DNA of 64,000 nt from Ostrea edulis. Lineage: Eukaryota. The notes under the pieces were generated by a model that saw only the letters and a program-made list of their open reading frames with translations, ran no database searches and was not told the DNA's origin. Below, in pieces: positions 2,755 to 60,994 of this stretch; the stretch's first letter is position 1, and the number at the start of each line of letters is the position of its first letter. The stretch spans positions 46,190,001 to 46,254,000 of the forward strand of contig NC_079168.1 in NCBI RefSeq assembly GCF_947568905.1, written 5' to 3'. A program made the translations under genes and the position numbers.

Positions 2755-3548
2755 TCATACCATACTATATACATGTACTATACTATAGTATATCATACTC
2801 TATACATGTACTATATTATAGTATATCATACTATATACATGTACTATACTATATTATATCATACTATATACATGTACTATACTATGTTATATCATACTAT
2901 ATACATGTACTATACTATATTATACCGTACTCTATACATGTACTATATTATAGAATATCATACTATATACATGTACTATACTATATTATATCATACTCTA
3001 TACATGTACTATATTATAGAATATCATACTATATACATGTACTATACTATATTATATCATACTATATACATGTACTATACTATATTATATCATACTCTAT
3101 ACATGTACTATACTATATTATATCATACTATATACATGTACTATACTATATTATACCGTACTCTATACATGTACTATATTATAGAATATCATACTATATA
3201 CATGTACTATACTATGTTATATCATACTATATACATGTACTATACTATATTATACCATATTATATACATGTACTATACTATAGTATATCATACTATATGC
3301 ATGTACTATACTATATTATATCATACTATATACATGTACTATACCATAGTATAGCATACTATATACATGTACTATACTATATTATATCATACTGTATATA
3401 TGTACTATACTATACTGTATACATGTACTAATCTATAATATACCGTACTATATATGTACTATGCTATATTATATCATACTATATTCATGTACTATACTAC
3501 ATTGTACCGTACTATATATGTATACTATATTATACTATACTATACTAT
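2755..3548. repeat. 33-bp minisatellite (catactatatacatgtactatactatattatat)n, ~20 clean copies degenerating rightwards
   Basis: Direct tandem periodicity; accounts for the YYIHVLYYIIS and MYYTILYHTIY repeat ORFs in the track. Confidence 0.97.
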
Positions 3549-15129: not shown

Positions 15130-16362
15130 TTAAAATCGATGATGTCTGTCCGGTACATCACGGAGAAAAATCAACTTCTTAAATCGTTTTTGTGCTTTTA
15201 ATTTCATTTTCAAATGTTGATCAGTGTCATCCTGTTCTTTCACACTGTTTCTTTCAGAATGAGAAAATGGTTCCAGTCGAACTAATGGCGTCGCATTTTG
15301 TCCATTCTCCCGACGTAATTTTCGAAACCTTTTCTTGTCGAAGGTTAATAGTTCATCACTAGAAGATTCGTGCTCAGGAATAGCCACGAGCTGAGATTGC
15401 ATATTGATAATGTTTCTTGGGGATTGTTTCGGGGGCGGGGAAGGTAGTGTTCGCTCACTCTTTGCCAATTTCTTTTGTGATGCCACGTCATTTTCTGGAA
15501 TATCATCGAGACCGGGCTTGTTTATCTGCATCCGTTTGGCTCGGCTTGGTCTTTTCTTGAAAGCTTCTACATTTGCTTTGTTAAAGTCCAGACTATCATT
15601 ATTAGTATCAGAATTTTCGGATTCCTGTTCTTTTTCTTGTTCAGAACTCTCTATTGGTGGTAAAGTTACTAAACCACTAAACTCTGTCTGGCCTTTAGGG
15701 GAAGGCGATTCATTAGTGCTTGTAGCTCTGTTGTTTCTAGACGTCTTTCTGTTCCCTGCACCAGCTGAAGGACGGTCTGAAGGTGAAGGACTCTGATTCT
15801 GAACATTTTCCATTTCTAAGTATCTCAACGTGTCCTCTTTATTGCCCTTATTTCTAATACTGAAATCCACTATATCATACAAATCCGACGCGCTCACAAA
15901 ACTAATTTTCACATGATGAGGGTTTTTATTATACCGATCGGGTAGGGACGGGAGAGAAAGTCTGGAAGCTGATTTTGGCTTGTCTCTTCGAGGTTTAGTT
16001 GACTTCGAATTAGCATTCTTGCCTACGAGTTCATCAAACGACGCTGGTCTCCTTCTATTTTTTGTTGAAGGAAACTTTGGAATGTGTTTAGCTCTAACGT
16101 ATAACGGTACTGACTCATGTGACAAAATCCCATCCACTCCAGTTTTTGCGTTTGCAATTTTGCGCATGCGTTCTGTATAAGCCAGCATAGACTCCTTTAG
16201 TCCCCTTTCACGGTTCACCATCCTAGATACAGAAACGTCAAACTCCCTTTCGTAATGCAAAAGCCGCCGGTCGTATTCCTGTTTCAAGCGCGAGATTTGA
16301 GTTGCAGCACGGTTTTCTGTTTGAAAAATTCCAGAACTACTTGAACTAGATGAAGAGGACAT
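15130..16362 (-). CDS. Uncharacterised ~411-aa protein: N-terminal poly-Ser and predicted coiled coil, then a long disordered Ser/Lys/Arg-rich region
   Basis: 1.25-kb open frame in AT-rich DNA; first in-frame ATG at 16362 (MSSSSSSSSSGIFQTENRAATQISRLKQEY...); candidate upstream acceptor ttcttttcag at ~16490-16481 implies a non-coding first exon. Confidence 0.8.
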   Translation of the reverse strand: MSSSSSSSSSGIFQTENRAATQISRLKQEYDRRLLHYEREFDVSVSRMVNRERGLKESMLAYTERMRKIANAKTGVDGILSHESVPLYVRAKHIPKFPSTKNRRRPASFDELVGKNANSKSTKPRRDKPKSASRLSLPSLPDRYNKNPHHVKISFVSASDLYDIVDFSIRNKGNKEDTLRYLEMENVQNQSPSPSDRPSAGAGNRKTSRNNRATSTNESPSPKGQTEFSGLVTLPPIESSEQEKEQESENSDTNNDSLDFNKANVEAFKKRPSRAKRMQINKPGLDDIPENDVASQKKLAKSERTLPSPPPKQSPRNIINMQSQLVAIPEHESSSDELLTFDKKRFRKLRRENGQNATPLVRLEPFSHSERNSVKEQDDTDQHLKMKLKAQKRFKKLIFLRDVPDRHHRF

Positions 16363-19300
16363 GGCCAGAAAAATGACCAATGTTCAAGTGGTGTCTAAAT
16401 CCTTCATTTTACTCTTTTCGCTACTCTGAGTCCAGTATTTTGTATGTTAACAAATCGCTCATCAAATAATCAGATCTGATCTGAAAAGAAATAATGTATG
16501 TTTATGCATAAGCTCATAGATAACAGAAGACATACTTAATTATCTAAGAGAAATAAAGATCGGCAAATATTTCTATTCAGAGATTACAAAACCAGGTATC
16601 CTTTTTCTAAAACTTTAAATGCTTTTTTATTACATTCAAGGTTATGTCTAGCCCTGTATTTGATACAAGTCCGGGTGATGAAGTATATTTCAATGCATGT
16701 TTAATATAATACATGACTGGGGGCCTTATTTATTGGGTGGTGACTGTCTACTTCCCCGTGCTGTTTCACCAACTAATTAGACCACGGAATGCAATTAATT
16801 AATCGTGAGAAAAGTTTGTTCGATATTTCTGAGAAAACCTCTGTAGTTTCTTAATCTTTGCATCTTTCCCATTCATTTGATTAAGAATTCTTTTTTGTGA
16901 TAGGGTCTGGATTCAGTCAACTACTAGTAGATGTGTACAAACTTCCGCAGAGGTATCACAATATTCATTATTCATGACAATACAGTTACACAACTTCGTC
17001 TCTTTGACTAAGTACATCAATGCTCTCTAAGTACTTGCTGATACGATACCTCATCCGGTGGTTTTACTTCATAGAAAAACCTGCAGTTCGAGCTGTATAA
17101 CTTTTCTGAGTAAAATATTTCCCGTTTTTTCTTTGGTTTGGAACTGGGTAAAATGTATTCCAGTAAATTACTAATCAAAATGGATGTTTTGAATTAAGAT
17201 TATTTGTCAAATGACAATTGTTAAAAAATATTATGAGCTTTCTTACAATGAATTAAAAATAATTGTATTCAAGGATGTGAAATGCAGATGCGTTCGTGAT
17301 GTGAAATGTTTGACATGAAGTCAATTCTTGGACATTTTAATTTTTTTTTTTTTACATGATCGAGACCAAAGCAACAAAAAGCAATAGATGAATGTATATA
17401 CCCAGGTAGTAATTTACAGGGACTGACACATTCAAAACATTTACTCAAAGTTAAAGCTCAGTGAGGTCCAAAACACAGTGACATCCAGTCCAATTTTTGT
17501 ATAAACAATGTGTTTTATTTTCCTAAAAGCATTAAATCCGCCTTAACATTAAAATTCAATCGAATAAAAGCCGCTAGATGTGTCAAGTAGACTCTCAAAT
17601 TTCTAGTGTTTAAACTCTCGAGATTTCAAGACAAGTCGGAGAAAGATTTCAAATCATGAAAATATACTCATACGATGCCTTACAATAAAGGACAACGGGG
17701 GGAATTTTAAAACTTGATTATCTCTATAGAACTGTGGGGAAAGACAGTGTTATGAAATGTTGGAATATTAACCCTACTTGTACGTAATGTATTCCAGTGC
17801 CTGTCATAATTACGACTATGTCATAATGACCATTAATTGGCACCAGACTTCCAGAAGCTTTTGTTACACATACAGTATATATCTCTATTCAAGTGCTTCT
17901 TCGTCTAAATCTACAATTGGCCATGTAATGATCCTTCATGCATTTTTAAAAGGTAAATGTCCACCTCGTATTTTAACGATGAAATTATTCTAGGTATACT
18001 CATTTGAAGCCCATAAAATTTAAAATTCTTCCCTCGCCTGATTTGCGCAATTGTTTGAGTTTCCCCAATTTCAGAATGGGAAAATGATATTTAATCCCAT
18101 AGAACTTCGCCTATAAAACAGAAATTTGCTACTTGTATCCACTATTTTATGGGTATTGATTTTTTTCGATCTGTACTTTAATTGAATGCCTATATATTTA
18201 CTTTAAATTCTCTAAATGTAATTTATAGTGAAATGCGCCAAACACCTTTTGGTAAAAATCGTGTTTGTATCCACATGAGCCCGAACAATGTAAATAAAAC
18301 TATTGTTAAATGTGGGGGAAACTAACAGTAAACGAGAATAAGTCATATACAAATAAGACAGGTTACAGTGACGGAATGACTGGTGTTTATCTATGATACG
18401 TGTAGATTCTTTGCACTGTAAGAAAGGTACCCGGAATCAAAATTTAAAAAAAATATTTAGACAGTTTAGTTTGAAGGCTTATCGTGTACTTACCGACGTG
18501 TTTTAACAGTTATTTTAGTGTAATATTTATAGTACTAACACTCGAATTTTTATCTGGATTTCGTTCTATTCTAGATTTTAGAGCATGGGATGAGCATTGG
18601 TGATATTTGAATTAAGACTGCGGTAGATATTATCATTCAGCTTCTTTAAAAAAAAAAATTTCATTTTCATTCTAGTTTTTTGAAGGAGGGGGGTGTCATC
18701 ATGTTTTTTCCCTTCTTGAAAAGATAAATGTATAAATAAAACGAAAACCAGAATTCTCTTTTTATAATGTGTGATAATTGATTGCTTCGCATAGTCTGAA
18801 TTAAAAATTCTGTATAGAGAATATCAAAGTGGCGAAACGATCCTTTATTCATTTTAAATATGTCTGATATTAAACTTGGTTAAATGAAGCGCGACAAAGT
18901 CTATCACCGTCTCTTTAAGAACAACAAAGATATTTTCATGTGTCTGTAGCTAAGTCTTCAACACGGAATGGTGACGATTTTTTGAAATTTGAACTACAAT
19001 TTTACAGGAGATACTCTGAATCACTTACCTTATTCCGAAATCTTCCGACACATGTTACATAGCGATAGAAGAAAAACATTTAAACTCTTCTGAATATGTA
19101 GAAATATACATATCGATACAAACTCTTAATTATTCGCAACTATTGTGTGTTCACTGTCAAGAACCTGGTGTCTTTAAAATACATTTAAAGAACTGGTGAT
19201 TGTATACACAACAGATTTGAGAGAGATAAATACCTCTAGATAAGAAATGCGCCCACTGTCATCAAATCTCCTGTAGCTTGAATATTCAAATCGAGTCCAC

Positions 19301-34276: not shown

Positions 34277-36871
34277 ATGAAAATTCTTATTCTGTTTTTG
34301 GTCTTCGGTTTGTTAGAGGCAGCGGTACATGTACATCAAGGGATTCTTAATTTGTATCACCAAAAATACTCAGGGGATGTAAGTATAAAATATGCTCCTT
34401 GCAAAATTAAAAAAAATGTTGATTTCTTAAGTTTATTATTTAAAATTGATAATAATTGAAAACCTAATTGAAATGACCGCAGTTTGATATGCTGCGAAAC
34501 TATTTGATGTGTAGAACAATCTTGAGGATTTGACATGAACGGCGTGCTACTACCCCATTCGTTACCTACTATGGGTGTCCAGTTGAATCATGTATCGAAT
34601 TGAGTTGCCAAGTTTCAGCGGAGTTCGGGCTATTTTTTTTTTATTGAAATGTATTGCTTATTTCGGAAACAAGAGTAGATTTATTCATAAATTACAACTC
34701 AATAGAACAACTGCAATTGTCAGATGTCAACTGATGACGTGAGAACAGTTTTGACATCCTGTTCTTCTTACCGTCAACTAACATTTGTAACGTATCATGT
34801 CTGTATGAATGGAAAATGGCGCAGTCACATGTTTTGCAAATTGTCGTATGATAAAGCATGATTTTAGGGTACCTACTACGGATCTGGGACGGGCGGAACC
34901 TGTAGCTACTCTCCACCCAGCATGCCCCCAGTGGCCAGTCACATAAACAAGCTCGTGGCCGTCAATGCTCCTCAATTCTACGGCTCGCTATCATGTGGAA
35001 TGTGCTTTAGGGTATGTATCATACACAGTTAAAAGGACGAATAGTTACTCAGTAACTTAAGATTGCTCCACATTTCGTGCTTTATCAGATTTACATTTCG
35101 TAAAGTACATTTACAAATGTACTATACAATTTTCTACAGAGAAAAAACGTCAATAGAAATTACATATGTACTTGATTTAGTTTGATAGCACACACGGTTT
35201 CTTGCTATACTATTTAAAAGCTCCCTCACAAACTTTAGCATGTGTCTATTTTAGGTTCACGGGACTGGACAAGGATCTGGGAATGACCCAATAACTGGAA
35301 CCTTTACAGCCTTTGCCAAAGACCTTTGTCCAGAGTGTCATGCCGGTCAGTTCATATCTCAAAGTACAAAGGTCTCCAGATAATCTATAATTATGTAGCT
35401 TTCATTCAAAAGTACAACATATTTTAATTCATTTAGATTATACCCTTTCGGTAATTTAGTTCAAAACTGGAGATAAATACATGATATTACGCTATTTCAA
35501 CTTAGATATTGCCTCTTTTATGAAAAGGGTCTCTGGACTTGGCCGAGAACGGAGATGGCCGATGGAAGATACAAATTCAAGCTATTCAATGCCCGGTAGG
35601 AAACAGCAAAATAGAGTACAAGTTTCAAGGCAGCAACCAATATTATCTAAAACTGCAAATACGAAATGGAAGGTAGTGTTTTCTTTATCTATCTGTTAGC
35701 AAACTCTTATTGATGACGTCATTTAAATTGTTGGAAAGAACAGGCGAGTTCAGACAGCGACAGACTACTTTGTACTAGACATGTATTCATATTTTCATTA
35801 TTTTACATTACCATCCAAGTTTGTTTCAATATCCACAAATAAAAAGCAATCTTATTTCACTGAAGTAGTGTAAAGATTAATACAAACTTGGACAATGGTA
35901 GAAATGTCAAGCATGATTTAATTTTAATAGCACATGATCATTACTTATTTCAGAGCTCATGGAATAAAAGTACACTGTAGTAAGGTATTTAATGATTATA
36001 GAAACTCTTCTGTCATTTCAGGATCCCCACAACCTCTGTTCAGATGTATCAACCAAAGTCGCATAGATGGTCCTCATTGAAACACACTTCGGATGGATTC
36101 TGGATATTCGGAACTGACCATATTGACAAACCTGTGGTCACTCCCTTCCAAGTGCGCCTGACTGCTGCCAACGGAGAAACGTTGCAGGATCATATACCGC
36201 GATTAGGTAAAAACCAAGTAAACTGTCTTGAACTACAGCTTCACTTATTGACCACAGTCTGTCGTGTCACTTTACAAACCTTTGTAAAGACAGAGATACC
36301 ATGAATGTACAATACAAATCACAAGACTTTTGAATATGCATAATGTCTTACAGAGTACAAATCACAAAGAACATGCATCAAAGCTTTTGAATAAAGATTT
36401 CGAACATACGTAAAATATACATAATCTTTTAAATGATAACACGATTTTGAACTTAAAATTTTACATTGTCTAGCATGTTTTTTGATATAAATCTATTTGA
36501 ATATAAATGATAAATCTGAAGATTTTTTCATAATAACTAAACTTCGAAATATCGCAGGTTTCTATGCACAAATGTATGTGTATATATAACAATATTGTTG
36601 ATCAGATATTGCTACGTCATACACTCCATTCAACTATTTTTACAAATAAAATAACTATATCATACCACATATCCCTTCCCTAGTCTTCAAAGTAATCAAT
36701 TTTAAAAGTAAAATTTTGCTCAAAATAATTTTTGGGAATAAAACGTTTTCTATTCACACATATTTCAAAATGTGTCATGTAATCAAGATTTCATTTTCAT
36801 TTCCAGCCAATGACGCCGTGATACACGGAGATGGTGTTCAGTACAAACTCGACTCTAATTTGCCTCATTAA
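34277..36871 (+). CDS. Expansin-like protein 1 (EXLX-type: DPBB plus CBM63-like domains), secreted, 243 aa, 6 exons
   Basis: Exons 34277-34378, 34868-35011, 35255-35345, 35528-35672, 36022-36206, 36807-36871 (phases 0,0,1,2,1; all GT-AG). Signal MKILILFLVFGLLEAA; motifs GDGTYYG, GGTCS, CGMCF, KDLCPEC, GSLDL, YYLKLQIRN, RLTAANG align with Bacillus EXLX1 ATYTG / TDLYPE / GALDL / WWAAIQVRN / RMTDIRG. Confidence 0.9.
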
Positions 36872-37341
36872 GCCTAAAACATAAAGAATGGTTTTTATAC
36901 TTTGTGTGGAAATATTTTATTATTTCATTAAGCTTTTGTGTATTGCTTGAAGTAAAAATAAAAACTAAAAACACACACACAAATCCGTTTGTGATATTAC
37001 GTCTTCCCTTTAAGTTTGTTAAGACGGATTGATATTACAATGTTTTGTATACATTGCGGAAGAGAAGGAGATTGAGGTGTGGAACGTTGTGGTTAGTAGT
37101 TTACCCGAATTTCCGCAATTAGGACCAGTACATGTACTTGCGGCCATGACATTTTTATTGACCGTTTTACCACCGAATGGACAGGTTTGCGTCCTTTCAG
37201 CTGTAGCTGACAAGTCGTGCTGCGAACTAATTGTAGATCTGTAAAACAACAATAAAACATGCTAAATAGAGTGATTTTCTACGCAAATAGTGAGAAACAT
37301 CCCTTAGAAAACACACGATGTTTATTATTTCTGTTTTCACG

Positions 37342-40300
37342 ATGCATGCAGCCATATTTTTCCTTGTGTTTGGTATAGTGCAGAGTTTTAGACATCGAGA
37401 CGTCCTGGATCTCTACAGATATAAATACCAAGGAAATGTAAGTATAACTTTCAGTAATTCTATTTTGCGGTTCGTTGGTATATAAAAGTCTAATAGAGTT
37501 TACGTTTGCAAGTCTGCAAGATAGTTCGTTATTTGTTATTGTCCCCAAAAGGATATATTGTTTTACAAAAAATAAGAGAAAAGGAATTTTCTATAAAGCT
37601 GATGCAAAATACTTTCACGTTCTTTAAGTATCACGTGATGTTCGATATAACTTGTGTATGTGATGCAATGTGCTTCTACCAACTAACTGTACACGTACTG
37701 AACGCTAGAGAAACTAACAAATGAAGTATGTACGAGTACATGGAACTGAGTACTTTACAAATTTGCCAAACCACCTTCCTCTACACCACTCGACACCCTG
37801 ATCAAGTATGTTTGAGTAATTCAATGTTGTAAAGGCTATCTAACAAACAAAAACATAAGATCATGCCAATTTTGACAGGGCATGTTTTTTGGAGCGTCTT
37901 ACGGAGGGACGTGCAGCTATGACCCTCCAAGTATGCCAGTTGCTGCTCGATATATTGACAGAACTATCGCCATCAATGCCCGTCAGTTTTATAGAGGATT
38001 TGCCTGTGGTGTCTGTTTTAGGGTACGTTTCTTGACCAATTAATGCATCGGTGTGATCACAGGAAAATGAAATGTTGTAATGCCTGCATTGTACTACCAG
38101 TTAGTATATACGATTAATGACGTTTAGGTTAAGATTGATATCATATATGTATATCTTGTGTTTGCAATTATTGCTTTTAACGTTGTAATGGAATAAAACC
38201 ATACCTTCTGATTATCTACTATATAGAAGTTTTGCGCATGTCATCAGTTCAAAAATTTCAGAAAACGACTGATGGTACAGTGTATGCAGTAACAGTAAAT
38301 TGAATTCAGATTTATTTCCCTAGCTTTAAACCAATTTGAATAGGGATAATGTTGTTAGGTGTGACCTTTTCAGGTTACCGAGTCGGGTAAAGGGAATGGT
38401 GGGGCACCTGTCGATAGGACATTCACTGTTCTTGTGAAAGATTTCTGTCCAAATTGTATGCCCGGTAAGACTTGTTTAAAGAGGGTGTTGCACCGAAGCG
38501 GGAACTTTCCCAATCGGAACTCCGTGCCTGCACTCGTGACGTAGAACTGACCTTCATCCATATTTATACTCTTATTGCGTTTTGCCATTTGAATACCTGT
38601 AGGATTCCCCAGTACTAAGGGCAAGCCTAATACATTTCATGTGTCAATACATTATACATATAGTCTAAACATAATTTTTGAAATCGTGAAAATTAGATTG
38701 TCTTCTTTTCTCTCTTGAGTATCAGATACAATGTATACGGTTACATGTTACGAGTGTATCAAATATTTAATATTCTATACTACTACAGTCTAAAAGCTCT
38801 TATACTCGTATGTATTATTTTCTACAACCAACAGTTGGCAACTGTACATGACTCTGGCCACAAAACAAAATATGATAAGTTTAATACGCATTAATCAAGT
38901 TCAACATAATTCGAAGTACATGCATCTGAAAGCATGGATTCACCATCATAGAAATTTGCTACTGGAATACATATCATTTTATCCACTTAAACTGTTTAAC
39001 GGTTATTTACCTTGTTTGGCCTTAAAGTTTTTTTTCCAAAGCTTTGCAAAGTTCACAGCGGTTTATCGTAAAAGACACCATGCCTTTGTCAACAACTTTC
39101 ACTCATAAAAACATGCAAGTTCTCGTTAGCAGCCTTGACTATTAAAACACAGGTATTGCATGCTGTATTCGGCGTGTTTGTGCGAGTCCTATTCACAAAC
39201 TAAACATTGTCCAGGTTGAAAGCTTATTTCAAACTCGGCACATTGTAATAAACAGAGATTCGACATGAAACATTTATAAAAACTAGAAGTGTGTTTCAAT
39301 TAAAAAAATCTAGATGGAAAACGTAATATGAAAAAAAATTGTGTTCGTGAGGGATTCGAACTTTCGTACGAACCCGATCGTTTTAATGTAAAAGTCAATG
39401 ACCTTACCCACTGAACCACGCATAAGACCATACATTACAAAGGAAAATTAACGTACAGGTGAAGTTGAAAATAATATCAGTGAAGTCATTTCGATTTTTT
39501 GAAATTTACAGCAAAAAAAAAAAAAAAAAAAAAAAGTCATCGTGAAACAAAATTTCAAAGCAACAGTTTTTTTTAGTGGAAAACTGGAAATACATGTTCA
39601 TGCTAAATCTATTTTGTTTCACGGAGGCAGTTTTTCTGAATTTCGGGGATACCCCTCCATTTTAACGCTAAAATTTATATAAATCGCTTATTATTCGATT
39701 TAAACTCGAATTATTTTGACAAATTTTTGCCAAGTTCAAGTTTTATATTTCTCATTCGCTGTTAACACAACATAGAGAACATATTAAACAAGTATTCAAA
39801 AACAATATTCACGCATGCACAAGCAATTCATATAAATATATATCACAGTCCTGATAATGAATAAATACAATAATAGACTATATATACATTTAACCTAAAG
39901 GGTTTACTCTCTCGGTAATTAATTCTATGTATTTACTTAATTTTAAAAGTAACGTTAGGTCTAGTATGAAATATTTCTGGTATAGAATGTCGCCTAATAT
40001 CATTTAAAGCAGGACACATAAGAATATAATGCATCTCACCTCCAATATCAGAACTGCAAATATGACATTTTCTTGGATTTCGATCTATATCTAGCCACCT
40101 TCCCGTTTCTATGTATTTGTAGTTCTAAACCTGGTTACTTTACGTTATTTATGTATTGAAATATTTGGCAATATATATTCTTGACATTTAAAAGCAAGAT
40201 TTGTAAAAAGTCTGTGAGTTATGCCTTTAGAAGATTTGTTACATTTATATACCCAGTCTTGAATAAACTGATCTTTCAATCTTTGTTTAACATGACAGAT

Positions 40301-43300
40301 TATCCAGTTAGTATTCATTTTGTCAACATTATACAATACATTAGACATTCCACAGTCATCTAATATTTTCTTTAAATCAAAAACCCATTTTGGTTGACAT
40401 CCCTTGTGAAATTTATGTACAAGAAATTTATACAACAAATAACAATATTTTTCGTTTTCCCCATGCATCATCCGACACCAAAAACTAACAGTTCTTGATT
40501 TTATATGTAAATGTAATGGTGGTCGACCTAACTCATCATAAATCATATAATTTGGAGTGGATGATTTGACATGTAATAATAATTTACAAAACTTTATGTG
40601 TATCTTTTCAATAATTTCATTGTTTCCAAAACCCCAAATTTCACATCCATATAGAAGGATAGGAACAACAATTTTATCAATACACGTCTTTTAAATTTAT
40701 TTTCAAAAATGTTTGAATCAAGACACAAGTTCCAAATGGTTTTATAATATATTTGAATAACTTGATTTTATCGATACCTTTAGGGAAATTGACATGAGAC
40801 GTGCAACACCTTCTTTAGTAAATGAATACAAACATGAACAAAGAAAATAAGTATTAAAAATGACGCCAGTAATAGTTGCTATAGAAAAATCTTGGAAAAT
40901 TTTAGATATTAATGCAAGAACTATCTTGCTTTCCTTCGATATTAAGGCGTACCAGCAATAAAAGATGACGTAGATGGCAGGCTTGGGATGGAAATGCAAG
41001 CAATACAGTGCCCTGTTGGGAACTCGTCACTGGAGTATAAATTCCAGGGGAGTAGCCCGTACTACATCAAGCTTCAGGTTAGAAATGCAAGGTAAGACTT
41101 TCTTAATCAGTGAACAAGGAATACGTTGACGGCGCGGTGTTACCGTTAGGGTGATCTCAGCTACATACAATGTATAGATGAGCGAACTTCAATTTCAAAT
41201 GCACTTTTGCAGTCTTGCTTTGTTTCGGTATAATAAACAATTTATTGCATGAATGTTCGGGAGATATGAAGATTTATTCACCCAAGAAATATCACATTCC
41301 CCTCAGGTAATATGATATTTTTTTGGGTGAATAAATCTTCCTATCTCCCACACTATCATGCAATAAATGTATATAAGCATTTACATTGTACAAATTTTGT
41401 TGCTTTGATAATTACGAGATATTCTAAACCAATTCATTATCTCTATATAATTTAACATATGACTTTTCTTATCGGACTCGGCGGGTGTGATCGGTCAATA
41501 GGGTATGATTACTCCTCCTGGGCACCTGATCCCACCTCTACCGTGTCCAGGTGTCCGTGTTTGCCCTTCTCTTTTCATTTGTATTTTTATGGGATTTACG
41601 AGAATGATTACTGTTCGTTACTTTCACTCCTACACGTAAAACTTTTTCCTGTGTCCCGGGGAAGGGACAGGTCGTCCCTAGGATTTATCTAATTGTTCTT
41701 GTCTTTTGGTCATTTTAGTGCGTAATATAATTTTTGCATTTTACTTTGTATCCACTTTATGGATGAAAAAATGTGGGAATTTCCTTGATTGCTTATTCCT
41801 ACACGGGGGTTTCATCATTTTGATTGAGAATGAGAAAATGCTCAGCGGATAATATCACATACTGTTTAGTTTGAATGGATCGACATACATGCATACAATA
41901 ATGAAAATTATCCTTTATTTCCATGAGTGTTGCATTGCAAAGGCCAAGTGAAATTTTAAAAAATTATTGAAAATGCTGTTTTGTTATAGTTTTTTGACAA
42001 TTTAAATATAATTATACTTAACCAAGAATGAAACTTTAAAATCATATTATACATTTATTGCATGATAGTGAGGGAGATATGAAGATTCCCCGAGGGCAAC
42101 ACCCGAAGGGATTATAATTTGGAGGGGTGTGTTGTGTGTGTGTGAATTATCATCATTCAATGAATTGTTTATTATATCGAAACAAAGCAAGACAACAAAA
42201 AATGCAATTGAAATTGCTGGTGGGGGTGGGGGTGGGGGGTGGGGGATCCTGTATCCGCTCATTTACTAGTATATGTAAATGATCTAGCCCTAACAAAAGA
42301 ACAGTACCATCAACATATTAGAATGCACAAGCAACGAAATAAAGTGAGATGATAATCTTAGACTTATTGCATTATTATACCTCAGTATGAGAATTATATG
42401 CAACGCGTAATCTGATTGGTCTAGACAGTCACGTGCCCAGGATGACAAAACTTCATATCTCCCTCTCAAACCAAACTCCCCGTCGAGGCCTCATTACGTC
42501 ACCTACGAATAGTTTGGTTTGTGAGCAAACGAACTCTGGTGGAAGTTTGCCTCTCAAACATCATATCTCCCTATCATATTTCATCCCTTGGGCAGCCTCG
42601 TACATTTTCCATCAATTCAACGTCAAAGACGACGAAGTGTATTGTGACGTCACATTAAGTCCGAGTCATTCTACTTCCATAGTTCGAAAGGCACAAAATA
42701 TGCGGGTCTCTAATACACAGTTAAACTCATGGTTTAGGTTGATACAAAAACAAGCAAGTAAATCAGCATTCAAGGAGAATGGAAATACAAAAACTGGTTA
42801 TCCTATCAATGTATTTTGCTGTTTGTACCTTCTAATACGTTGACGGCGCGATGTTACTGCTAGGGCGATCTCAGCTACATACATCTACAATGTATAGATG
42901 AGCAGACTCCAATTTCATATGCAATTTTGTGATCTTGCTTTGTTTCGGTATAATAAACAATTTATTGCATAAATGTTCGGGCGTTGCCCTCGGGTAATAT
43001 GATTTTTCTTGGGTGAATAAATCTTCATATCTCCCTCACTATAATGCAATAAATGTATAACCTTTATTATGTTTCCTATCTCCCTGAATGCTGATTATTT
43101 ACACGGTCGGTGATGAAACTTATTAGAAATTCATTCAATGGTGTAGAGTTTATGGAAAGTAGACGAGGTCCCCCGGGTGATGCCGTACACGACGTCCCGA
43201 GATACATCGAGGGAAGGGATATATGATATTTGTTTGAAAATCGTTGTGTCATTCCCTTATGTATAGAATTATCATATTGAAATATAATGATACTTTTTAG

Positions 43301-43813
43301 ACTTCATTATTTGAATATTTCAAATATTTTGGGTAAAATCGCTACTTTATTGCCTCCTCCTTTTTTCTAGAATTCCTGCCACAAGAGTAGACTTGTATCA
43401 ACCAAAGTGGCGGCAGTGGACCCCCCTTGCTCATACCTCTGATGGTTTTTGGACATTTGGAACGGATCCTGTCGAGAGACCTGTCGTGGCCCCTTTTCGC
43501 ATTCGTTTGACTGCAGCTAACGGGCAAAGAATTGTTGATACTGTTCCTGAATTAGGTAAATCTTACCATCGCTCAAGAATTATCGATGAATTTCAAGATA
43601 GTTTTCCTTATTCTATCATAAACGAATTAATGTGCTTTCTGTTCAAAACTTACCAAAATCATATGATATAAAAGTGTGGATTAAATCACATATACTCAGT
43701 TTGAGCTCAACTTCCATTATACAAAATAATATTAATCTTTCATTTCAGTGAATGGCGTTGTATTGCAAGGCAATGGAAAACAATTTGAATTCGATCCCAA
43801 TTTACCCCGGTAG
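37342..43813 (+). CDS. Expansin-like protein 2, secreted, 241 aa (249 aa if the in-frame ATG at 37318 is used), 6 exons
   Basis: Exons 37342-37437, 37879-38022, 38374-38464, 40947-41091, 43371-43555, 43749-43813. Exons 2-6 are identical in length and phase to paralog 1. MHAAIFFLVFGIVQS...YQGNGMFFG...GGTCS...CGVCF...KDFCPNC...QAIQCPVGNS...YYIKLQVRN...TSDGFW. Confidence 0.9.
39345..39425 (-). mobile_element. tRNA-like SINE head
   Basis: Minus strand gtggttcagtgggtaagg...agttcgaatccc (A- and B-box-like) without a coherent cloverleaf. Confidence 0.55.
40140..40780 (-). mobile_element. LINE ORF2 (post-RT region) fragment in intron 3 of expansin-like 2
   Basis: DKIVVPILLYGCEIWGFGNNEIIEKIHIKFCKLLLHVKSSTPNYMIYDELGRP...W...LKKIL, a typical non-LTR C-terminal region. 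Confidence 0.85.
41120..43060. repeat. Two direct ~230-260-bp copies of a foldback element (41120-41376, 42834-43059) plus an inverted piece (~42045-42085) in intron 4 of expansin-like 2; a PLE 3' fragment at 41462-41635
   Basis: aatacgttgacggcgcg...cactat.atgcaataaatgtata repeated; internal inverted repeat gaagatttattcacccaag / gggtgaataaatcttc. Confidence 0.7.
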
Positions 43814-45179: not shown

Positions 45180-48100
45180 GCACACACGCACACACATACA
45201 CACGCACGAGCACGCACAAACACACACACACACACACACGTGTGTGTTTGCACACACCTTGTATGTCATACACAAAATGGTGATTTTTTTTTTTGCTCCT
45301 TTTATATTCATTAAATACTTGGAAAGTTTTGTTTTTTGCACGCCTCGAATACACCATTTGTTAACTAAATTTAGATGAATGTGCTGACGTCATAATGCTT
45401 CCCAGTATGAGGACAATCAAGGGGTATAATAGTTGGAAAACAAATTTAATCCATTTAAGAACACCATGAACATACATAATACTTTGCCAAAAAATCCTTT
45501 AAAATCAATTTTCCATCTTCATAATTTTCAGAATGTCTATCTTTTAAATCCCAAAAAGCTGAGAATGCGATCCCTCCATCTTCTCCGCGGTCTCACCACA
45601 CGGGGTTCTTCCGCAGGAGAAAGTCCCGTGGTGTAGAGGAAACTATACCGTAAAGGCCTTGGTTTCATGGGCTTGGTCTTCGATTCTTCGTTTTTGGTGG
45701 AATCCTGGGTATCGGGTGCAAGTTTAAAGCTTTCTATACTGGATAGAAACAGCTTTCGGGGAATAAACTTTGGTATTTTCCCTGTTTCTAATGCCTCAAG
45801 CTCCCCAGGTTTGACCAGTTCACTTTTGACCGGCTGGGTTTTCTGTTTTAATTCTTGTAATTCAACAGGTTTCTGTAGACACTCATTTTTCATTTCCTGA
45901 CTCGCATCTGAAGTGTTCACATGTTTTGTTTCTATCATTACACTGCCGTCATCCTGATCTAGTTTCTGGGCTGTTATATCTTGAAGAACTATTGCACATG
46001 CCTTTTCGACAATGCTCAGGATATATGCTGCAACATCCTCTGTTTTTATACCAAGTTCTTCGCCACTGATTTCAGGAACAGAATGTTTGATTTGTCCGTT
46101 TTCTGCGTTCAGAGAGCTCTCAACAGTTGTCTTGTCTTGTGACTCTTTCTCCAGCACTGCCTCTCCAGTTTGCATGCTTGTCTCAAACACATTTCTCTTC
46201 TTTATTTTCTTTGGTTTGTGTAACTGCATGAAGTATTCGTCGTCAGCCCATGACGGCAGGAATAAAGAAACATTTGCATTTGCAGCTTTTAAAACTTCAA
46301 TTTTCGAGATGGTGTCCTTAACCTGCTCATAGGGTACAAAATCATTTTTCGAATCCTTGTCGTCTGCCATAGAACGGAAAACTTGTCCAGAAATCATCTT
46401 CTTTTGATTTTCCATTCGCTTTACTCTTATCTAATGTATCGCCTCCAAGCAAGCGCACAGTATGTTTACGTTTAGTCGCAAGGGAGAGTGTGTTACGTCG
46501 TACACTTTATGACGTGCTGTACATTGTGACGTAATAATTCGGTGACGTTTAAGAAATCAGATATTCTCTGAAAGAAGAGCATACACTTTCACCCCTTTCT
46601 TGCCCTGATTTTCACTCACAAAGCGCATTCTTAGTGTTATTTGTAATGACAGTAAATGCTTTAATATCAACCATTCTAATGTTTCATTTTATGAAAATAA
46701 ATTCTTGAATTAAATTAAAGACCATTGGAATAAAAAAAAAGCACTAAATACTAAAGCAGCACCCATATCACACGACCTTTCACCTCAGATAAGCTTTTTA
46801 AAAAACTAGGGTGAAGGGTTTGTTCACGAACGCCCCATAGTTATTGATAAATTTTCGTAAGACAAAGTATTCATATGAATATTTAATTTGTTATAGGACT
46901 TGAAAGTTTGTTGTGAAGGGGAAATTGGGCATATAGTTAAGGGTTCTATCTAAAATCGCATTTAATTTACTGTTGGGTGAAAATAACCAAAACAAATGTT
47001 CAATAAAATTATTATCTTTTTCTATGTATTGAGAATACGAAAACCAATACAAAGTCTGCAAATGGTCTCAGTAAAGCATTTAAGATATCTTTAGTTTGTT
47101 ATCTGTGTTCGTATCTATGCCAAATATTCAACAGAACGATTAGAAATTATTCAAAATGTCCATAAAATTTCTGGCTTCTAGACGATTATTTTATGATGAC
47201 TATTAAGACTAATAGTTGTCGTAAAGAAGACGAGAAAATGTTCATTTAATGCGTCAAAGAAATGAATAAGCAATGATATCTTTTCTTGAATTCAACAACA
47301 ACAACAACGAAAAACCCGAGTTTCCGTTCTCAAAACTTGACGTGATTTTTATTTATCGTTTTATAATACATGTATGTAGCTAGTCTAATTGTAAAACAAC
47401 GGTTTTTCAAACTTTCATAGCTAAATCGGTGTAAAACTTGAGCGAAAAGACCGATCGGGCTAGGTACAAATTCTATCGAGAATAAAGATGTACAAGGGGC
47501 GGGTTCAGGAATTGAAATTAGGGGGCGCCACTTCATAAAGCGCGAGAAAATTCCAATGCGAAGACTGGTAAAATATTTAGAGCAATTTTGATCAATTCCG
47601 GAGATGAACGAACTAAGTGAAAAGAATCGTTAATTATATGTTGCAACTATTTATTGGTAGATCAATAAAGCATCTAGTCTGATATAAGATTTGAACTTAA
47701 TTCGCAATGTACCACAGTCAACAGCAAGCTATAAACAGTTTACGCCTGTCCGATCGATCGATACGAAAATGCGTTTGTCCGATCAGACGATCGATTATGT
47801 ATAATTTCTTTTTCCGTGACGTTGCACGTGAAAATTTCTAATCTTGACAGTTTCCGTAAAGTCACATGGTCTTATATTTGAATAAGAAGACCTCTGAATG
47901 GGATACATTTTCACAATGAAGCTCGAGTTATTTCCCCTTGAATACAGGTTGCTGTCCACAATTCATAGCGTCAATATAAGGATTTATTATATTAGTAAAT
48001 CTGATTGTGATTAAGTGCCAGTTAAGGGTTTTTATGTAATTAATGAAAAATAATATTTATGTGTCCATTGTGTGGTTGTTGGTTGTTTTTTTTTCGCAGG

Positions 48101-50107: not shown

Positions 50108-50986
50108 CTATCTTTTAAATCCCAAAAAGCTGAGAATGCGATCCCTCCATCTTCTCCGTGGTCTCACCACACGGGGTTCTTCCGCAGGAGAAAGTCCCGT
50201 GGTGTAGAGGAAACTATACCGTAAAGGCCTTGGTTTCATGGGCTTGATCTTCGATTCTTCGTTTTTGGTGGAATCCTGGGTATCGGGTGCAAGTTTAAAG
50301 CTTTCTATACTGGATAGAAACAGCTTTCGGGGAATAAACTTTGGTATTTTCCCTGTTTCTAAGGCCTCAAGCTCCCCAGGTTTGACCAGTTCACTTTTGA
50401 CCGGCTGGGTTTTCTGTTTTAATTCTTGTAATTCAACAGGTTTCTGTAGACACTCATTTTTCATTTCCTGACTCGCATCTGAAGTGTTCACATGTTTTGT
50501 TTCTATCATTACACTGCCGTCATCCTGATCTAGTTTCTGGGCTGTTATATCTTGAAGAACTATTGCACATGCCTTTTCGACAATGCTCAGGATATATGCT
50601 GCAACATCCTCTGTTTTTATACCAAGTTCTTCGCCACTGATTTCAGGAACAGAATGTTTGATTTGTCCGTTTTCTGCGTTCAGAGAGCTCTCAACAGTTG
50701 TCTTGTCTTGTGACTCTTTCTCCAGCACTGCCTCTCCAGTTTGCATGCTTGTCTCAAACACATTTCTCTTCTTTATTTTCTTTGGTTTGTGTAACTGCAT
50801 GAAGTATTCGTCGTCAGCCCATGACGGCAGGAATAAAGAAACATTTGCATTTGCAGCTTTTAAAACTTCAATTTTCGAGATGGTGTCCTTAACCTGCTCA
50901 TAGGGTACAAAATCATTTTTCGAATCCTTGTCGTCTGCCATAGAACGGAAAACTTGTCCAGAAATCATCTTCTTTTGATTTTCCAT
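50108..50986 (-). CDS. Uncharacterised 292-aa orphan protein, copy 2
   Basis: Differs from copy 1 by T>I (ESKIKPM). Confidence 0.8.
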   Translation of the reverse strand: MENQKKMISGQVFRSMADDKDSKNDFVPYEQVKDTISKIEVLKAANANVSLFLPSWADDEYFMQLHKPKKIKKRNVFETSMQTGEAVLEKESQDKTTVESSLNAENGQIKHSVPEISGEELGIKTEDVAAYILSIVEKACAIVLQDITAQKLDQDDGSVMIETKHVNTSDASQEMKNECLQKPVELQELKQKTQPVKSELVKPGELEALETGKIPKFIPRKLFLSSIESFKLAPDTQDSTKNEESKIKPMKPRPLRYSFLYTTGLSPAEEPRVVRPRRRWRDRILSFLGFKR

Positions 50987-59159: not shown

Positions 59160-60994
59160 CAACAAACAAAAACATCTCTTAAATGCTTTACTGAGACCAT
59201 TTGCAGACTTTATATTGGTTTTCGTATTCTCAATACATAGAAAAAGATAATAATTTTATTGAACATTTGTTTTGGTTATTTTCACCCAACAGTAAATTAA
59301 ATGCGATTTTAGATAGAACCCTTAACTATATGCCCAATTTCCCTTCACAACAAACTTTCAAGTCCTATAATAAATTAAATATTCATATGAATACTTTATG
59401 TCTTACGAACCCCTCACCCTAGTTTTTTAAAAAGCTTATCTGAGGTGAAAGCTCGTGTGATATGGGTGCTGCTTTAGTATTTATTGTTTCTTCTTTTTTT
59501 ATTCCAATAGTCTTTAATTTAATTCAAGAATTTATTTTCATAAATTGAAAAATTAGAATGGTTGATATTAAAGCATTTACTGTCATTACAAATAACACGA
59601 AGAATGTGCTTTGTGATTGAAAATCAGGGCAAAAAAGGGGTGAAAGTGTATGCTCTTCTTTCAGAGAATATCTGATTTCTTAAACGTCACCGAATTATTA
59701 CGTCACAATGTACAGCACGTCATAAAGTGTACGACGTAACACACTCTCCCTTGCGACTAAACATAAACATACTGTGCGCTTGCTTGGAGGCGATACATTA
59801 GATAAGAGTAAAGCGAATGGAAAATCAAAAGAAGATGATTTCTGGACAAGTTTTCCGTTCTATGGCAGACGACAAGGATTCGAAAAATGATTTTGTACCC
59901 TATGAGCAGGTTAAGGACACCATCTCGAAAATTGAAGTTTTAAAAGCTGCAAATGCAAATGTTTCTTTATTCCTGCCGTCATGGGCTGACGACGAATACT
60001 TCATGCAGTTACACAAACCAAAGAAAATAAAGAAGAGAAATGTGTTTGAGACAAGCATGCAAACTGGAGAGGCAGTGCTGGAGAAAGAGTCACAAGACAA
60101 GACAACTGTTGAGAGCTCTCTGAACGCAGAAAACGGACAAATCAAACATTCTGTTCCTGAAATCAGTGGCGAAGAACTTGGTATAAAAACAGAGGATGTT
60201 GCAGCATATATCCTGAGCATTGTCGAAAAGGCATGTGCAATAGTTCTTCAAGATATAACAGCCCAGAAACTAGATCAGGATGACGGCAGTGTAATGATAG
60301 AAACAAAACATGTGAACACTTCAGATGCGAGTCAGGAAATGAAAAATGAGTGTCTACAGAAACCTGTTGAATTACAAGAATTAAAACAGAAAACCCAGCC
60401 GGTCAAAAGTGAACTGGTCAAACCTGGGGAGCTTGCGGCCTTAGAAACAGGGAAAATACCAAAGTTTATTCCCCGAAAGCTGTTTCTATCCAGTATAGAA
60501 AGCTTTAAACTTGCACCCGATACCCAGGATTCCACCAAAAACGAAGAATCGAAGACCAAGCCCATGAAACCAAGGCCTTTACGGTATAGTTTCCTCTACA
60601 CCACGGGACTTTCCCCTGCGGAAGAACCCCGTGTGGTGAGACCGCGGAGAAGATGGAGGGATCGCATTCTCAGCTTTTTGGGATTTAAAAGATAGGCATT
60701 CTGAAAATTATGAAGATGGAAAATTGATTTTAAAGGATTTTTTGGCAAAGTATTATGTATGTTCATGGTGTTCTTAAATGGATTAAATTTGTTTTCCAAC
60801 TGTTATACCTCTTGATTGTCCTCATACTGCGAAGCATTATGACGTCAGCACATTCATCTAAATTTAGTTAACAAATGGTGTAATCGAGGCGTGCACAAAA
60901 CAAAACTTTCCAAGTATTTAATGAATATAAAAGGAGGGGGAAAAATCACCATTTTTTGTATGACATATAACAAGGTGTGTGTGTGTGTATGCGC

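What the first reader, a model, noticed from the sequence alone, without database searches (positions are those of the whole stretch)
34277..43813. Tandem pair of intron-rich, microbial-type expansin-like genes in an animal genome
Both proteins have the full two-domain expansin layout (DPBB plus CBM63-like, with YY at the EXLX1 W125/W126 position). Expansins are plant and microbial cell-wall-loosening proteins and are rare in animals. Five shared introns with identical phases show long residence in the genome rather than contamination. An ancient horizontal acquisition, used to loosen algal or plant-detritus polysaccharides during filter feeding, is plausible. Similar proteins may already be auto-annotated in bivalves, but I know of no established function.
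Basis: partly seen in the sequence, partly recalled or inferred. Interest (0 to 1): 0.72.

Follow-up and report, generated by a model that had tools for sequence, protein, structure and literature searches.

The report
Oyster expansin gene pair, alga-like introns
The flat oyster carries two real, neighbouring genes for expansins, the wall-loosening proteins of plants and microbes. The family runs through molluscs and a brachiopod, and three of its five introns sit exactly where green-algal relatives have theirs, which points to a eukaryotic rather than bacterial source.

Summary
Two six-exon genes lie on the + strand: G1 at 34277-36871 (243 aa) and G2 at 37318-43813 (249 aa). Exons 2-6 have identical lengths, and the five introns share positions and phases (0,0,1,2,1).

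- **Gene models:** G2 equals the RefSeq Ostrea edulis protein LOC125650994 exactly. G1 is transcribed and spliced as modelled.
- **Identity:** Family profile and AlphaFold model match two-domain microbial expansins (EXLX1 type) over both domains. They match plant expansins less well, and GH45 cellulases only weakly.
- **Already annotated:** NCBI names many mollusc relatives 'expansin-YoaJ-like'. A 2019 preprint noted bivalve expansin annotations but left open whether they were contamination. They are not.

New here:
- All five introns are conserved in a gastropod, a chiton and the brachiopod Lingula.
- Three introns coincide in position and phase with introns of a green-algal homolog.
- The animal clade's nearest relatives are algal, giant-virus and unidentified eukaryote-like genes. 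Sampled bacterial EXLX1 lies across a 100/100 branch.
- G2 is an oyster-specific paralog that lost the Thr12/Asp82 equivalents, yet it is under purifying selection.

Function is untested. The scan had already noted the G2 Asp-to-Ala change on this same stretch.

The parts
34277..34378 (+). G1 exon 1: start codon, hydrophobic signal-peptide-like N-terminus, ends just before the GTYYG motif (phase 0)
   Evidence: RNA contig spans 34211-34378 and joins to 34868
34868..35011 (+). G1 exon 2 (144 nt): N-terminal half of domain 1, with the Thr12-equivalent in GTYYG
35255..35345 (+). G1 exon 3 (91 nt): domain 1, KDLCPEC motif (Asp71-equivalent and two conserved Cys)
35528..35672 (+). G1 exon 4 (145 nt): SLDL with the Asp82-equivalent codon at 35536-35538, the domain 1/2 junction, and YY (35641-35646) at EXLX1 W125/W126
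36022..36206 (+). G1 exon 5 (185 nt): core of domain 2 (CBM63-like); weak Pfam Expansin_C hit on its own
36807..36871 (+). G1 exon 6 (65 nt) with stop codon
37318..37437 (+). G2 exon 1 (a second in-frame ATG at 37342 would give the same N-terminal length as G1)
   Evidence: equals the RefSeq model
37879..38022 (+). G2 exon 2 (144 nt): GMFFG, Thr12-equivalent replaced by Met
   Evidence: exon 2-3 joint seen in one RNA-like contig
38374..38464 (+). G2 exon 3 (91 nt)
40947..41091 (+). G2 exon 4 (145 nt): VPAIK replaces SLDLA, with an Ala codon at 40955-40957 where G1 has the Asp82-equivalent; YY is retained
43371..43555 (+). G2 exon 5 (185 nt): domain 2 core
43749..43813 (+). G2 exon 6 (65 nt) with stop codon
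38465..40946 (.). G2 intron 3, enlarged to 2482 nt (182 nt in G1); holds a very high-copy repeat at about 38478-38580 and a 133-aa repeat-like ORF on the minus strand at 40145-40546

Best explanation
G1 and G2 are bona fide, tandemly duplicated oyster genes. Each encodes a small, probably secreted, two-domain expansin of the microbial (EXLX1) type. Domain 1 is a double-psi beta-barrel stabilised by six conserved cysteines. Domain 2 is a CBM63-like beta-sandwich.

They belong to one lophotrochozoan family (Mollusca plus Brachiopoda) with a fixed six-exon structure. That family sits in a eukaryote/giant-virus branch of EXLX-type expansins, apart from the sampled bacterial clade. It shares three exact intron positions with a green-algal homolog. 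The most likely history is that an intron-bearing gene of a green alga or similar protist entered an early lophotrochozoan genome as DNA, before molluscs and brachiopods split.

G1 keeps the Thr/Asp pair of the domain 1 groove and two of the three aromatic residues of the domain 2 binding face. I infer that it binds and non-hydrolytically loosens beta-glucan (or chitin-like) fibres, most plausibly helping endogenous cellulases open algal cell walls in the gut.

G2 arose in the oyster lineage and lost both groove residues. It keeps an intact, conserved domain 2 and is under purifying selection. I infer that it is a loosening-inactive binding protein or has a shifted substrate.

Shown here: gene structure, transcription of G1, fold and family, taxonomic spread, intron sharing, selection. 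Inferred: secretion, substrate, physiological role, direction of transfer.
For: - **Gene models and splicing:**
- **Copy number and place:** only two copies in the genome, deep in a chromosome-scale contig.
- **Tandem pair:** kept in Saccostrea echinata with the same exon lengths.
- **Family and fold:**
- **Distribution:**
- **Introns in animals:** all five are identical in Lottia, the chiton Liolophura and Lingula.
- **Introns in algae:** introns 1, 3 and 4 coincide in column and phase with Elliptochloris. Introns 1 and 4 also coincide in Trebouxia and Myrmecia. Chance estimate for three of five is 2e-6, or 2e-3 if only a tenth of sites were usable.
- **Careful ML tree:** bacteria-like clade is separated by a 100/100 branch, animals form one clade (88/54), Mollusca 99/96, oyster G1+G2 98/93.
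- **Key residues:** the Thr12-equivalent is T in 45 of 50 family members and the Asp82-equivalent is D in 47 of 50. For Asp82 the only exceptions are the three G2-clade sequences (A, A, L). For Thr12 the G2 clade (M, M, I) departs, plus two Ser. The W125/W126 equivalents are Y or W, then Y.
- **Asp82 in the literature:** D82A and D82N inactivate EXLX1, and Thr12 hydrogen-bonds Asp82 (PMC5072189).
- **Selection:** dN/dS between Ostrea and Saccostrea is about 0.045 for G1 and 0.095 for G2.
- **G2 model:** domain 2 is confident (pLDDT 96-98). Confidence is low only at the two altered groove loops.
Against: - No functional or tissue data exist, so the role in digestion is inference from expansin biology and diet.
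- The third platform residue (EXLX1 Y157) aligns with a near-invariant Asp, so cellulose binding may differ.
- Single sequences fall below Pfam gathering scores and just under the NCBIfam cut-off: 90.5 bits against 100.
- Backbone support among the eukaryote-type subclades is weak. Animals plus algae as one clade is neither recovered nor rejected (AU p = 0.30), so the donor lineage is unresolved.
- No plant, fungal, amoebozoan, cnidarian or hemichordate sequences were in the tree.
- Expansin-fold proteins in Exaiptasia and hemichordates leave room for older animal ancestry.
- dS is near saturation, so the dN/dS values are rough.
Confidence: 0.7

Rival explanations
1. Ancient vertical inheritance. 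An intron-bearing EXLX-type expansin gene was already present in early eukaryotes or early animals. It survives only in scattered lineages (green algae, some protists, lophotrochozoans, perhaps cnidarians and hemichordates) after many losses.
For: Shared intron positions fit common descent as well as transfer. The animals form a single clade, not nested inside the sampled algae. Expansin-fold proteins are reported in Exaiptasia and a hemichordate cluster.
Against: An exhaustive HMMER search with the exon 5 profile found only mollusc and brachiopod full-length proteins among named animals. Two word-seeded searches gave no annelid, arthropod, vertebrate or other animal hits. This history would need very many independent losses.
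Confidence: 0.22
2. Direct bacterial donor, the usual meaning of 'microbial-type'. An intronless bacterial EXLX1 gene entered a lophotrochozoan ancestor and gained all five introns afterwards. The matches with algal introns are parallel gains at favoured sites.
For: The best solved-structure and NCBIfam matches are bacterial EXLX1 proteins. NCBI names relatives 'expansin-YoaJ-like'.
Against: The sampled bacterial clade is separated from all eukaryote-type sequences by a long 100/100 branch. Three exact intron coincidences are unlikely by chance. The six conserved cysteines and the CPEC motif are shared with algal and viral relatives.
Confidence: 0.06
3. The protein family is the same but the job is different. 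The proteins act on the animal's own or on microbial glycans rather than on food. Candidates are chitin of the shell framework, periostracum or radula, adhesive secretions, or microbial cell walls in immunity.
For: The family is found in shell-forming molluscs and a brachiopod. Fungal loosenin-like relatives act on chitin networks (PMC9888185, listed). An Exaiptasia expansin fused to a chitin-binding domain is up-regulated in the adhesive pedal disc. The Y157-equivalent is not aromatic.
Against: There is no tissue or substrate evidence either way. The W125/W126 equivalents that stack on glucan rings are kept. Molluscs have endogenous cellulases with which an expansin could cooperate (established knowledge; GH45 of Mytilus appears).
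Confidence: 0.3
4. G2 is a decaying duplicate (pseudogene in the making) and not a functional protein.
For: G2 lost the Thr12 and Asp82 equivalents. It has a long branch after the duplication, enlarged repeat-filled introns, and much lower contig depth than G1 in the RNA-like runs.
Against: The reading frame is intact and all splice sites are canonical. Orthologs with the same substitutions occur in two Saccostrea species. dN/dS is about 0.1. A spliced exon 2-3 contig was seen. Domain 2 is modelled with confidence.
Confidence: 0.04
5. Contamination or assembly artefact from ingested algae or microbes.
For: This was raised as an open possibility for bivalve expansin annotations by Chase et al. 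(bioRxiv 10.1101/637728).
Against: The genes lie at 46.2 Mb inside a chromosome-scale contig. AT-rich animal-type introns carry oyster repeats. Independent DNA runs cover the locus contiguously. The conserved tandem locus in Saccostrea and the orthologous loci in Lottia and Lingula are flanked by ordinary animal genes.
Confidence: 0.01

Closest known systems
Bacterial and fungal expansins of the EXLX1 type (Bacillus subtilis YoaJ/EXLX1, 3D30; Streptomyces Ss_EXLX1, 9MS5; Clavibacter, 4JS7; Talaromyces, 7WVR)
   Same: Same two-domain architecture and size. Profile E-values run from 8e-27 to 1e-17 and TM-scores from 0.76 to 0.82. G1 keeps the Thr12, Asp71 and Asp82 equivalents and aromatic residues at W125/W126.
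   Different: Only about 25% identical. Six conserved cysteines are present, and Tyr73 is replaced by the first Cys of CPEC. The Y157-equivalent is Asp. The genes have five spliceosomal introns. They lie on a separate eukaryote/giant-virus branch and score below the curated NCBIfam and Pfam cut-offs.
Expansin-like genes of trebouxiophyte green algae (Elliptochloris bilobata, Trebouxia sp. A1-2, [Myrmecia] bisecta) and of giant viruses (NCLDV contigs, GVMAGs)
   Same: About 40% identity to the oyster G1 ortholog. Same cysteine pattern and the same GDGTYYG, CPEC, LD, GDGRW and FQGSNPWY motifs. Two to three identical intron positions.
   Different: Trebouxia and the two long viral-type proteins (P0073, P0135) carry a Ser/Pro/Thr linker and Cys-rich modules at the C-terminus that look like fungal-type cellulose-binding modules (by eye; not scanned). 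The viral genes are intronless. The algae have two further introns at other sites, and the animals have two of their own.
Plant expansins (EXPA/EXPB, e.g. maize EXPB1 2HCZ, Phl p 1 1N10)
   Same: Same fold and domain order. Domain 1 is disulfide-stabilised. Intron positions are conserved within the family (PMC13493406).
   Different: Much weaker profile matches, E 3.5e-9 and 1.5e-7. The HFD motif reads (S/G/A)LD here. Whether any of the five introns equals plant introns A, B, C, F or the Chara intron 'H' near HFD was not tested.
Mollusc GH45 endoglucanases (Mytilus edulis Cel45A, 1WC2), another DPBB protein of molluscs
   Same: Domain 1 shares the double-psi beta-barrel fold. A role in cellulose digestion is possible.
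   Different: It matches domain 1 only and weakly (E 2.8e-3, TM 0.32-0.42). GH45 has no CBM63-like second domain and is a hydrolase.

Membership tests
Expansin, microbial EXLX1 type | Two tightly packed domains: N-terminal double-psi beta-barrel (D1) plus C-terminal CBM63 beta-sandwich (D2) | tested here: met
   AlphaFold model of the G1 ortholog (pLDDT 95.4). The top 12 Foldseek PDB hits are all two-domain expansins. The profile alignment covers both domains. The G2 model has pLDDT 88.8.
Expansin, microbial EXLX1 type | Match to the curated family model NCBIfam NF041144 at its cut-off (100 bits) | tested here: inconclusive
   The G1 ortholog scores 90.5 bits (E 8e-26) over model positions 1-193 of 194. 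G2 scores 61.8 bits (E 5e-17). Both are highly significant and full length but below the cut-off set for bacterial proteins.
Expansin, microbial EXLX1 type | Domain 1 groove residues: Thr12-Asp82 pair (Asp82 needed for wall loosening) and Asp71 | tested here: met
   Met for G1 (T, D, D). Not met for G2, which has Met at Thr12 and Ala at Asp82 but keeps Asp71. The role of Asp82 is taken from PMC5072189.
Expansin, microbial EXLX1 type | Domain 2 aromatic platform W125, W126, Y157 | tested here: inconclusive
   Tyr-Tyr sits at positions 125/126 in both genes. Across the family these are Y or W, then Y. The Y157-equivalent is Asp in 49 of 50 sequences, with Phe and Trp two and three residues later. 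No structural superposition of side chains was possible.
Expansin, microbial EXLX1 type | Non-hydrolytic loosening or weakening of cellulosic material, and polysaccharide binding | not testable with these tools
   Needs recombinant protein assays.
Pfam Expansin_C (PF01357), DPBB_1 (PF03330), EXPB1_D1 (PF22514) | Score at or above the Pfam gathering threshold | tested here: not met
   Best single-sequence scores are 14-18 bits against cut-offs of 24.6-28.8. Only a few relatives carry precomputed hits.
GH45 endoglucanase | Single catalytic DPBB domain closely matching GH45 structures | tested here: not met
   The Mytilus and Phanerochaete GH45 structures match weakly and over domain 1 only. A second CBM63-like domain is present.
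Plant expansin superfamily (EXPA/EXPB/EXLA/EXLB) | Closer to plant than to microbial expansins; HFD motif | tested here: not met
   Plant structures score 14 or more orders of magnitude worse than bacterial ones in the profile search. The motif is SLD, not HFD.

The most novel reading that the evidence does not exclude
An early lophotrochozoan took up genomic DNA of a green alga or similar protist, from food or a symbiont, more than 500 million years ago. It kept a complete expansin gene with the donor's introns. Three of those donor introns are still spliced in oysters, snails, chitons and brachiopods today. This would be a rare documented case of eukaryote-to-animal gene transfer in which the introns themselves mark the donor. 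In oysters the gene later duplicated into a canonical expansin and an Asp-less derivative with a new role.
Probability: 0.4. Interest if true: 0.8.

Novelty: new member of a known kind. Interest (0 to 1): 0.62.

Why it matters
Expansins are central to plant growth and to microbial attack on plant walls. In animals they have been little more than database labels, and the one survey found in the library said it was unconfirmed whether the bivalve entries were real genes or contamination (10.1101/637728).

This locus settles that for oysters. It also shows a phylum-spanning, intron-conserved family in molluscs and a brachiopod.

The intron positions shared with green-algal homologs give a concrete, testable marker for a eukaryote-to-animal transfer, or for very deep ancestry. 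Such a marker is usually missing in claims of horizontal transfer into animals.

The oyster pair offers a natural experiment. One copy has the residues needed for wall loosening and one lacks them, and both are under selection. That could show what an expansin does in an animal, and whether it aids digestion of algal cell walls alongside endogenous cellulases.

Tried and rejected
- **Pfam on single exons and on whole relatives:** only sub-threshold hits. The profile, NCBIfam and fold searches were needed.
- **G1 protein not in the database:** it was not returned by either protein search. Structure and family work for G1 therefore used its 84%-identical Saccostrea ortholog P0052.
- **Alternative G2 exon 4 acceptor at 40956:** rejected. 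The acceptor at 40947 gives the conserved 145-nt exon and the exact RefSeq protein.
- **An 'SFDIKAY' peptide in another frame upstream of G2 exon 4:** it looked like an HFD-type motif but is out of frame and intronic, so I took it as chance.
- **Kelch-repeat hits of the exon 5 profile:** spurious.
- **GH45 cellulase reading:** rejected.
- **Contamination and G2-pseudogene readings:** rejected (see rivals).
- **First viral-contig scan with alignment A3:** failed for lack of a conserved stretch. It was repeated with a closer set.
- **Giant virus as direct vector to animals:** considered, because viral genes sit in both the algal subclade and next to the animals. The viral copies are intronless, which does not fit the shared introns.
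- **Supplement of the 2019 preprint listing animal expansins:** not held as text.
- **Paper searches for mollusc expansin function or tissue:** nothing relevant.
- **Tissue of the RNA-like runs:** not given, and the runs are only guessed to be RNA.
Full report
**1. What is in the sequence**

Between 34277 and 43813 on the + strand lie two genes of six exons each.
- G1 exons: 34277-34378, 34868-35011, 35255-35345, 35528-35672, 36022-36206, 36807-36871 (243 aa).
- G2 exons: 37318-37437, 37879-38022, 38374-38464, 40947-41091, 43371-43555, 43749-43813 (249 aa).

All ten introns are GT-AG. Exons 2-6 are 144, 91, 145, 185 and 65 nt in both genes, and the intron phases are 0,0,1,2,1. The proteins are 51% identical.

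The G2 model is identical, residue for residue, to RefSeq 'uncharacterized protein LOC125650994 [Ostrea edulis]' (P0078). This also fixes the organism as the flat oyster, as earlier notes of the scan said.

G1 was not returned by the protein searches. It aligns without internal gaps at 84% identity to Saccostrea echinata LOC133183887.

Contigs of two RNA-like runs join the six G1 exons exactly at the modelled junctions. The one-letter offsets at two junctions are synonymous variants. Two DNA runs cover the locus without any joint. One low-depth contig also shows the G2 exon 2-3 joint.

A six-frame search of the whole assembly with the exon 5 profile finds only these two copies, at about 46.2 Mb of contig C5.

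**2. What the proteins are**

Single sequences give only sub-threshold Pfam hits to Expansin_C, EXPB1_D1 and DPBB_1.

A 50-sequence family profile matches solved expansins over both domains:
- Streptomyces Ss_EXLX1 (9ms5): E 8e-27.
- Bacillus subtilis EXLX1/YoaJ: E 3.6e-23.
- Xanthomonas, Talaromyces and Clavibacter expansins: E 1e-17 to 8e-20.
- Maize EXPB1: 3.5e-9. Phl p 1: 1.5e-7.

NCBIfam's EXLX1 model covers positions 1-193 of 194 in the G1 ortholog (90.5 bits, E 8e-26). G2 scores 61.8 bits. Both are under the curated 100-bit cut-off.

The AlphaFold model of the G1 ortholog is very confident (pLDDT 95.4, pTM 0.89). Its twelve best PDB matches are all two-domain expansins, microbial ones first (TM by target 0.76-0.82). 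Mytilus GH45 cellulase matches weakly and over domain 1 only. Atlas fold neighbours are bacterial EXLX1 clusters.

The HMM alignment to EXLX1 gives these equivalents:

| EXLX1 residue | In this family |
|---|---|
| Asp71 | Asp of KDLCPEC |
| Tyr73 | first Cys of CPEC |
| Asp82 | Asp of SLDL in G1 (codon 35536-35538) |
| Trp125/Trp126 | Tyr-Tyr (35641-35646) |
| Tyr157 | a near-invariant Asp, followed by Phe and Trp |

The Thr of GTYYG corresponds by motif to Thr12. The third platform residue is not conserved.

**3. Distribution and prior knowledge**

Relatives occur in many lineages:
- Bivalves: Saccostrea, Mytilus, scallops, Mya, Mactra, Dreissena, Mercenaria, Ruditapes, unionids, Pinctada.
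- Gastropods: Haliotis, Patella, Lottia, Littorina, Pomacea, Babylonia, Nucella, Aplysia, Lymnaea, Biomphalaria, Physella, and the land snails Bradybaena and Candidula.
- The chiton Liolophura.
- The brachiopod Lingula.

NCBI already names many of them 'expansin-YoaJ-like', and UniProt calls them 'Expansin-like EG45 domain-containing protein'.

Chase et al. (bioRxiv 10.1101/637728) noted expansin annotations in marine bivalves. They stated that it was unconfirmed whether these were cellular genes or contamination. I found no paper on their function or tissue.

Expansin-fold proteins also exist in Exaiptasia, fused to a chitin-binding domain and up-regulated in the pedal disc (PMC6626399). A cluster that is mostly hemichordate also appears. 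Their relation to this family was not tested.

**4. Gene structure across phyla**

I rebuilt exact exon chains for annotated proteins on their genomic loci.

All five oyster introns are at the same alignment column and phase in Saccostrea, Lottia, the chiton and Lingula. Exon 3 is 91 nt in every one. The six-exon structure therefore predates the split of molluscs and brachiopods. The Lingula and Lottia loci are flanked by ordinary animal genes.

The green alga Elliptochloris bilobata has a homolog about 40% identical, with five introns. Three of them coincide in both column and phase with animal introns:
- Intron 1: phase 0, between GD and GTYYG.
- Intron 3: phase 1, in the Gly codon just before the (S/A)LD motif.
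- Intron 4: phase 2, in the Arg codon of N-x-R before (I/V)P.

Trebouxia sp. A1-2 and [Myrmecia] bisecta share introns 1 and 4. Trebouxia also has a phase-1 intron three columns from animal intron 5, in a poorly aligned stretch.

The protein alignment is gap-free across these junctions, and intronless viral homologs read straight through them. This supports the algal models.

With 675 possible slots, three or more matches out of five has a probability of about 2e-6. If only a tenth of the slots were usable, it is about 2e-3.

**5. Phylogeny**

I built a careful ML tree (LG+C20+F+G4 PMSF) of 73 sequences.
- All sampled bacteria-like EXLX1 proteins fall on one side of a 100/100 branch of length 1.3. 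These include myxobacteria and others, plus a Euglena and an 'm51a1' EukProt entry.
- The other side holds an algal/giant-virus group (94/79).
- It also holds a group (77/82) of unidentified transcripts with C-terminal membrane anchors, an AT-rich virus-like contig (P0129), and the animals.
- The animals form one clade (88/54), and Mollusca has support of 99/96.
- Forcing animals plus algae into one clade is not rejected (AU p = 0.30). The sister group is therefore unresolved.

Evidence that some relatives are giant-virus genes:
- P0135 lies on a 381-kb contig of densely packed intronless genes with an NCLDV major capsid protein.
- P0073 lies on a similar 752-kb contig with a capping enzyme and an SNF2 helicase.
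- P0129 sits next to a capping enzyme on a contig of 23% GC.
- Two IMG/VR giant-virus MAGs encode relatives.
- An Atlas cluster of 53 Nucleocytoviricota proteins is the nearest unnamed look-alike.

No plant, fungal, amoebozoan, cnidarian or hemichordate sequences were in the tree.

**6. The oyster duplication**

G1 and G2, with their Saccostrea orthologs, form one clade (98/93).

In S. echinata the G1 ortholog is followed 2.7 kb downstream, on the same strand, by a G2 ortholog with exon lengths 144/91/145/185/65. The tandem pair is therefore older than the Ostrea-Saccostrea split and younger than the split from scallops and mussels.

In the 50-sequence alignment the Asp82-equivalent departs from the consensus only in the three G2-clade sequences (Ala, Ala, Leu). 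At the Thr12-equivalent the G2 clade has Met, Met, Ile, and two other sequences have Ser.

In EXLX1, D82A and D82N abolish wall-loosening activity, and Thr12 hydrogen-bonds Asp82 (PMC5072189).

Even so, G2 is intact and conserved. Nei-Gojobori dN/dS between Ostrea and Saccostrea is about 0.095, against 0.045 for G1. dS is 1.2-1.8, near saturation, so these values are rough.

The G2 AlphaFold model is confident in domain 2 (pLDDT 96-98). It is uncertain only at the two altered groove loops. The G2 introns are enlarged by repeats.

**7. Reading**

Shown:
- Real, expressed, tandem oyster genes.
- EXLX-type two-domain expansin fold.
- One lophotrochozoan family with a fixed intron pattern.
- Intron positions shared with green-algal homologs.
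- Nearest relatives that are eukaryotic or giant-viral, not the sampled bacterial clade.
- Purifying selection on both paralogs.

Inferred:
- Secretion, from the hydrophobic N-terminus and six conserved cysteines.
- Non-hydrolytic binding and loosening of beta-glucan fibres by G1, probably in the digestion of algal walls.
- A binding-only or retargeted role for G2.
- Acquisition from an alga-like eukaryote as intron-bearing DNA.

Deep vertical ancestry with many losses, and a non-digestive substrate such as chitin, remain live alternatives.

**8. Limits**

- The spliced G1 protein could not be given to the tools by reference. Its 84%-identical ortholog stood in for fold and family tests.
- The RNA-like runs are Logan contigs whose RNA status and tissue are not on record.
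- The taxon sampling of the tree is what three capped searches returned.

Noticed in passing
window 45537-46415 (-), 50108-50986 (-), 59817-60695 (+): Three near-identical copies of a 292-aa ORF, differing by one or two residues, with no Pfam match. This is a recent segmental duplication or a mobile unit just downstream of the expansin pair.
   Followed up: partly
window 2664-3431: A long ORF made of tandem repeats of a short Tyr/Ile/His-rich unit (YYIHVLYY-like). It is probably a minisatellite rather than a gene.
   Followed up: no
window 38478-38580 (G2 intron 3): A very high-copy repeat. Summed contig depth reaches about 24,000 in a DNA run, against about 30 for the flanks. It is also present in the RNA-like runs.
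   Followed up: no
window 15130-16380 (-): A 416-aa Ser/Lys-rich ORF without any Pfam match. It may be a single large exon of a neighbouring gene.
   Followed up: partly
L011 (P0135), L010 (P0073), L012 (P0129), L014, L015: Giant-virus (NCLDV) contigs and GVMAGs encode intronless expansin-like genes of the same eukaryote-type branch. The two long ones end in a Ser/Pro/Thr linker plus Cys-rich modules that look like fungal-type cellulose-binding modules, as does the Trebouxia protein. P0129, on a 23%-GC contig, branches next to the animal clade.
   Followed up: partly
P0064, P0065, P0067, P0117, P0126 (JGI contigs of about 1 kb, e.g. L013): Unidentified expansin-like transcripts with a C-terminal transmembrane anchor are among the nearest neighbours of the animal clade. 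The source organism is unknown.
   Followed up: partly
L007 17033 (Saccostrea echinata G2 ortholog, intron 5): The donor of intron 5 is GC rather than GT, while the exon lengths are unchanged.
   Followed up: no
literature: PMC10913743: In a metatranscriptome of Kellet's whelk egg-capsule fluid, 'Expansin-YoaJ (EXLX1)' was assigned to bacteria by best hit. Neogastropods carry this family in their own genomes, so the transcript may be the host's.
   Followed up: no
literature PMC6626399 and Atlas fold search (row 10): A sea anemone (Exaiptasia) has an expansin-YoaJ-like gene fused to a chitin-binding domain and up-regulated in the pedal disc. A 55-member cluster that is mostly hemichordate has the same fold (TM 0.74). 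Their relation to the mollusc and brachiopod family is unknown.
   Followed up: no
P0033 (Logan contig, 247 aa): A very divergent relative with a conserved domain 2. Its domain 1 lacks the GDGTYYG, CPEC and LD motifs. It has a long branch and its origin is unknown.
   Followed up: no
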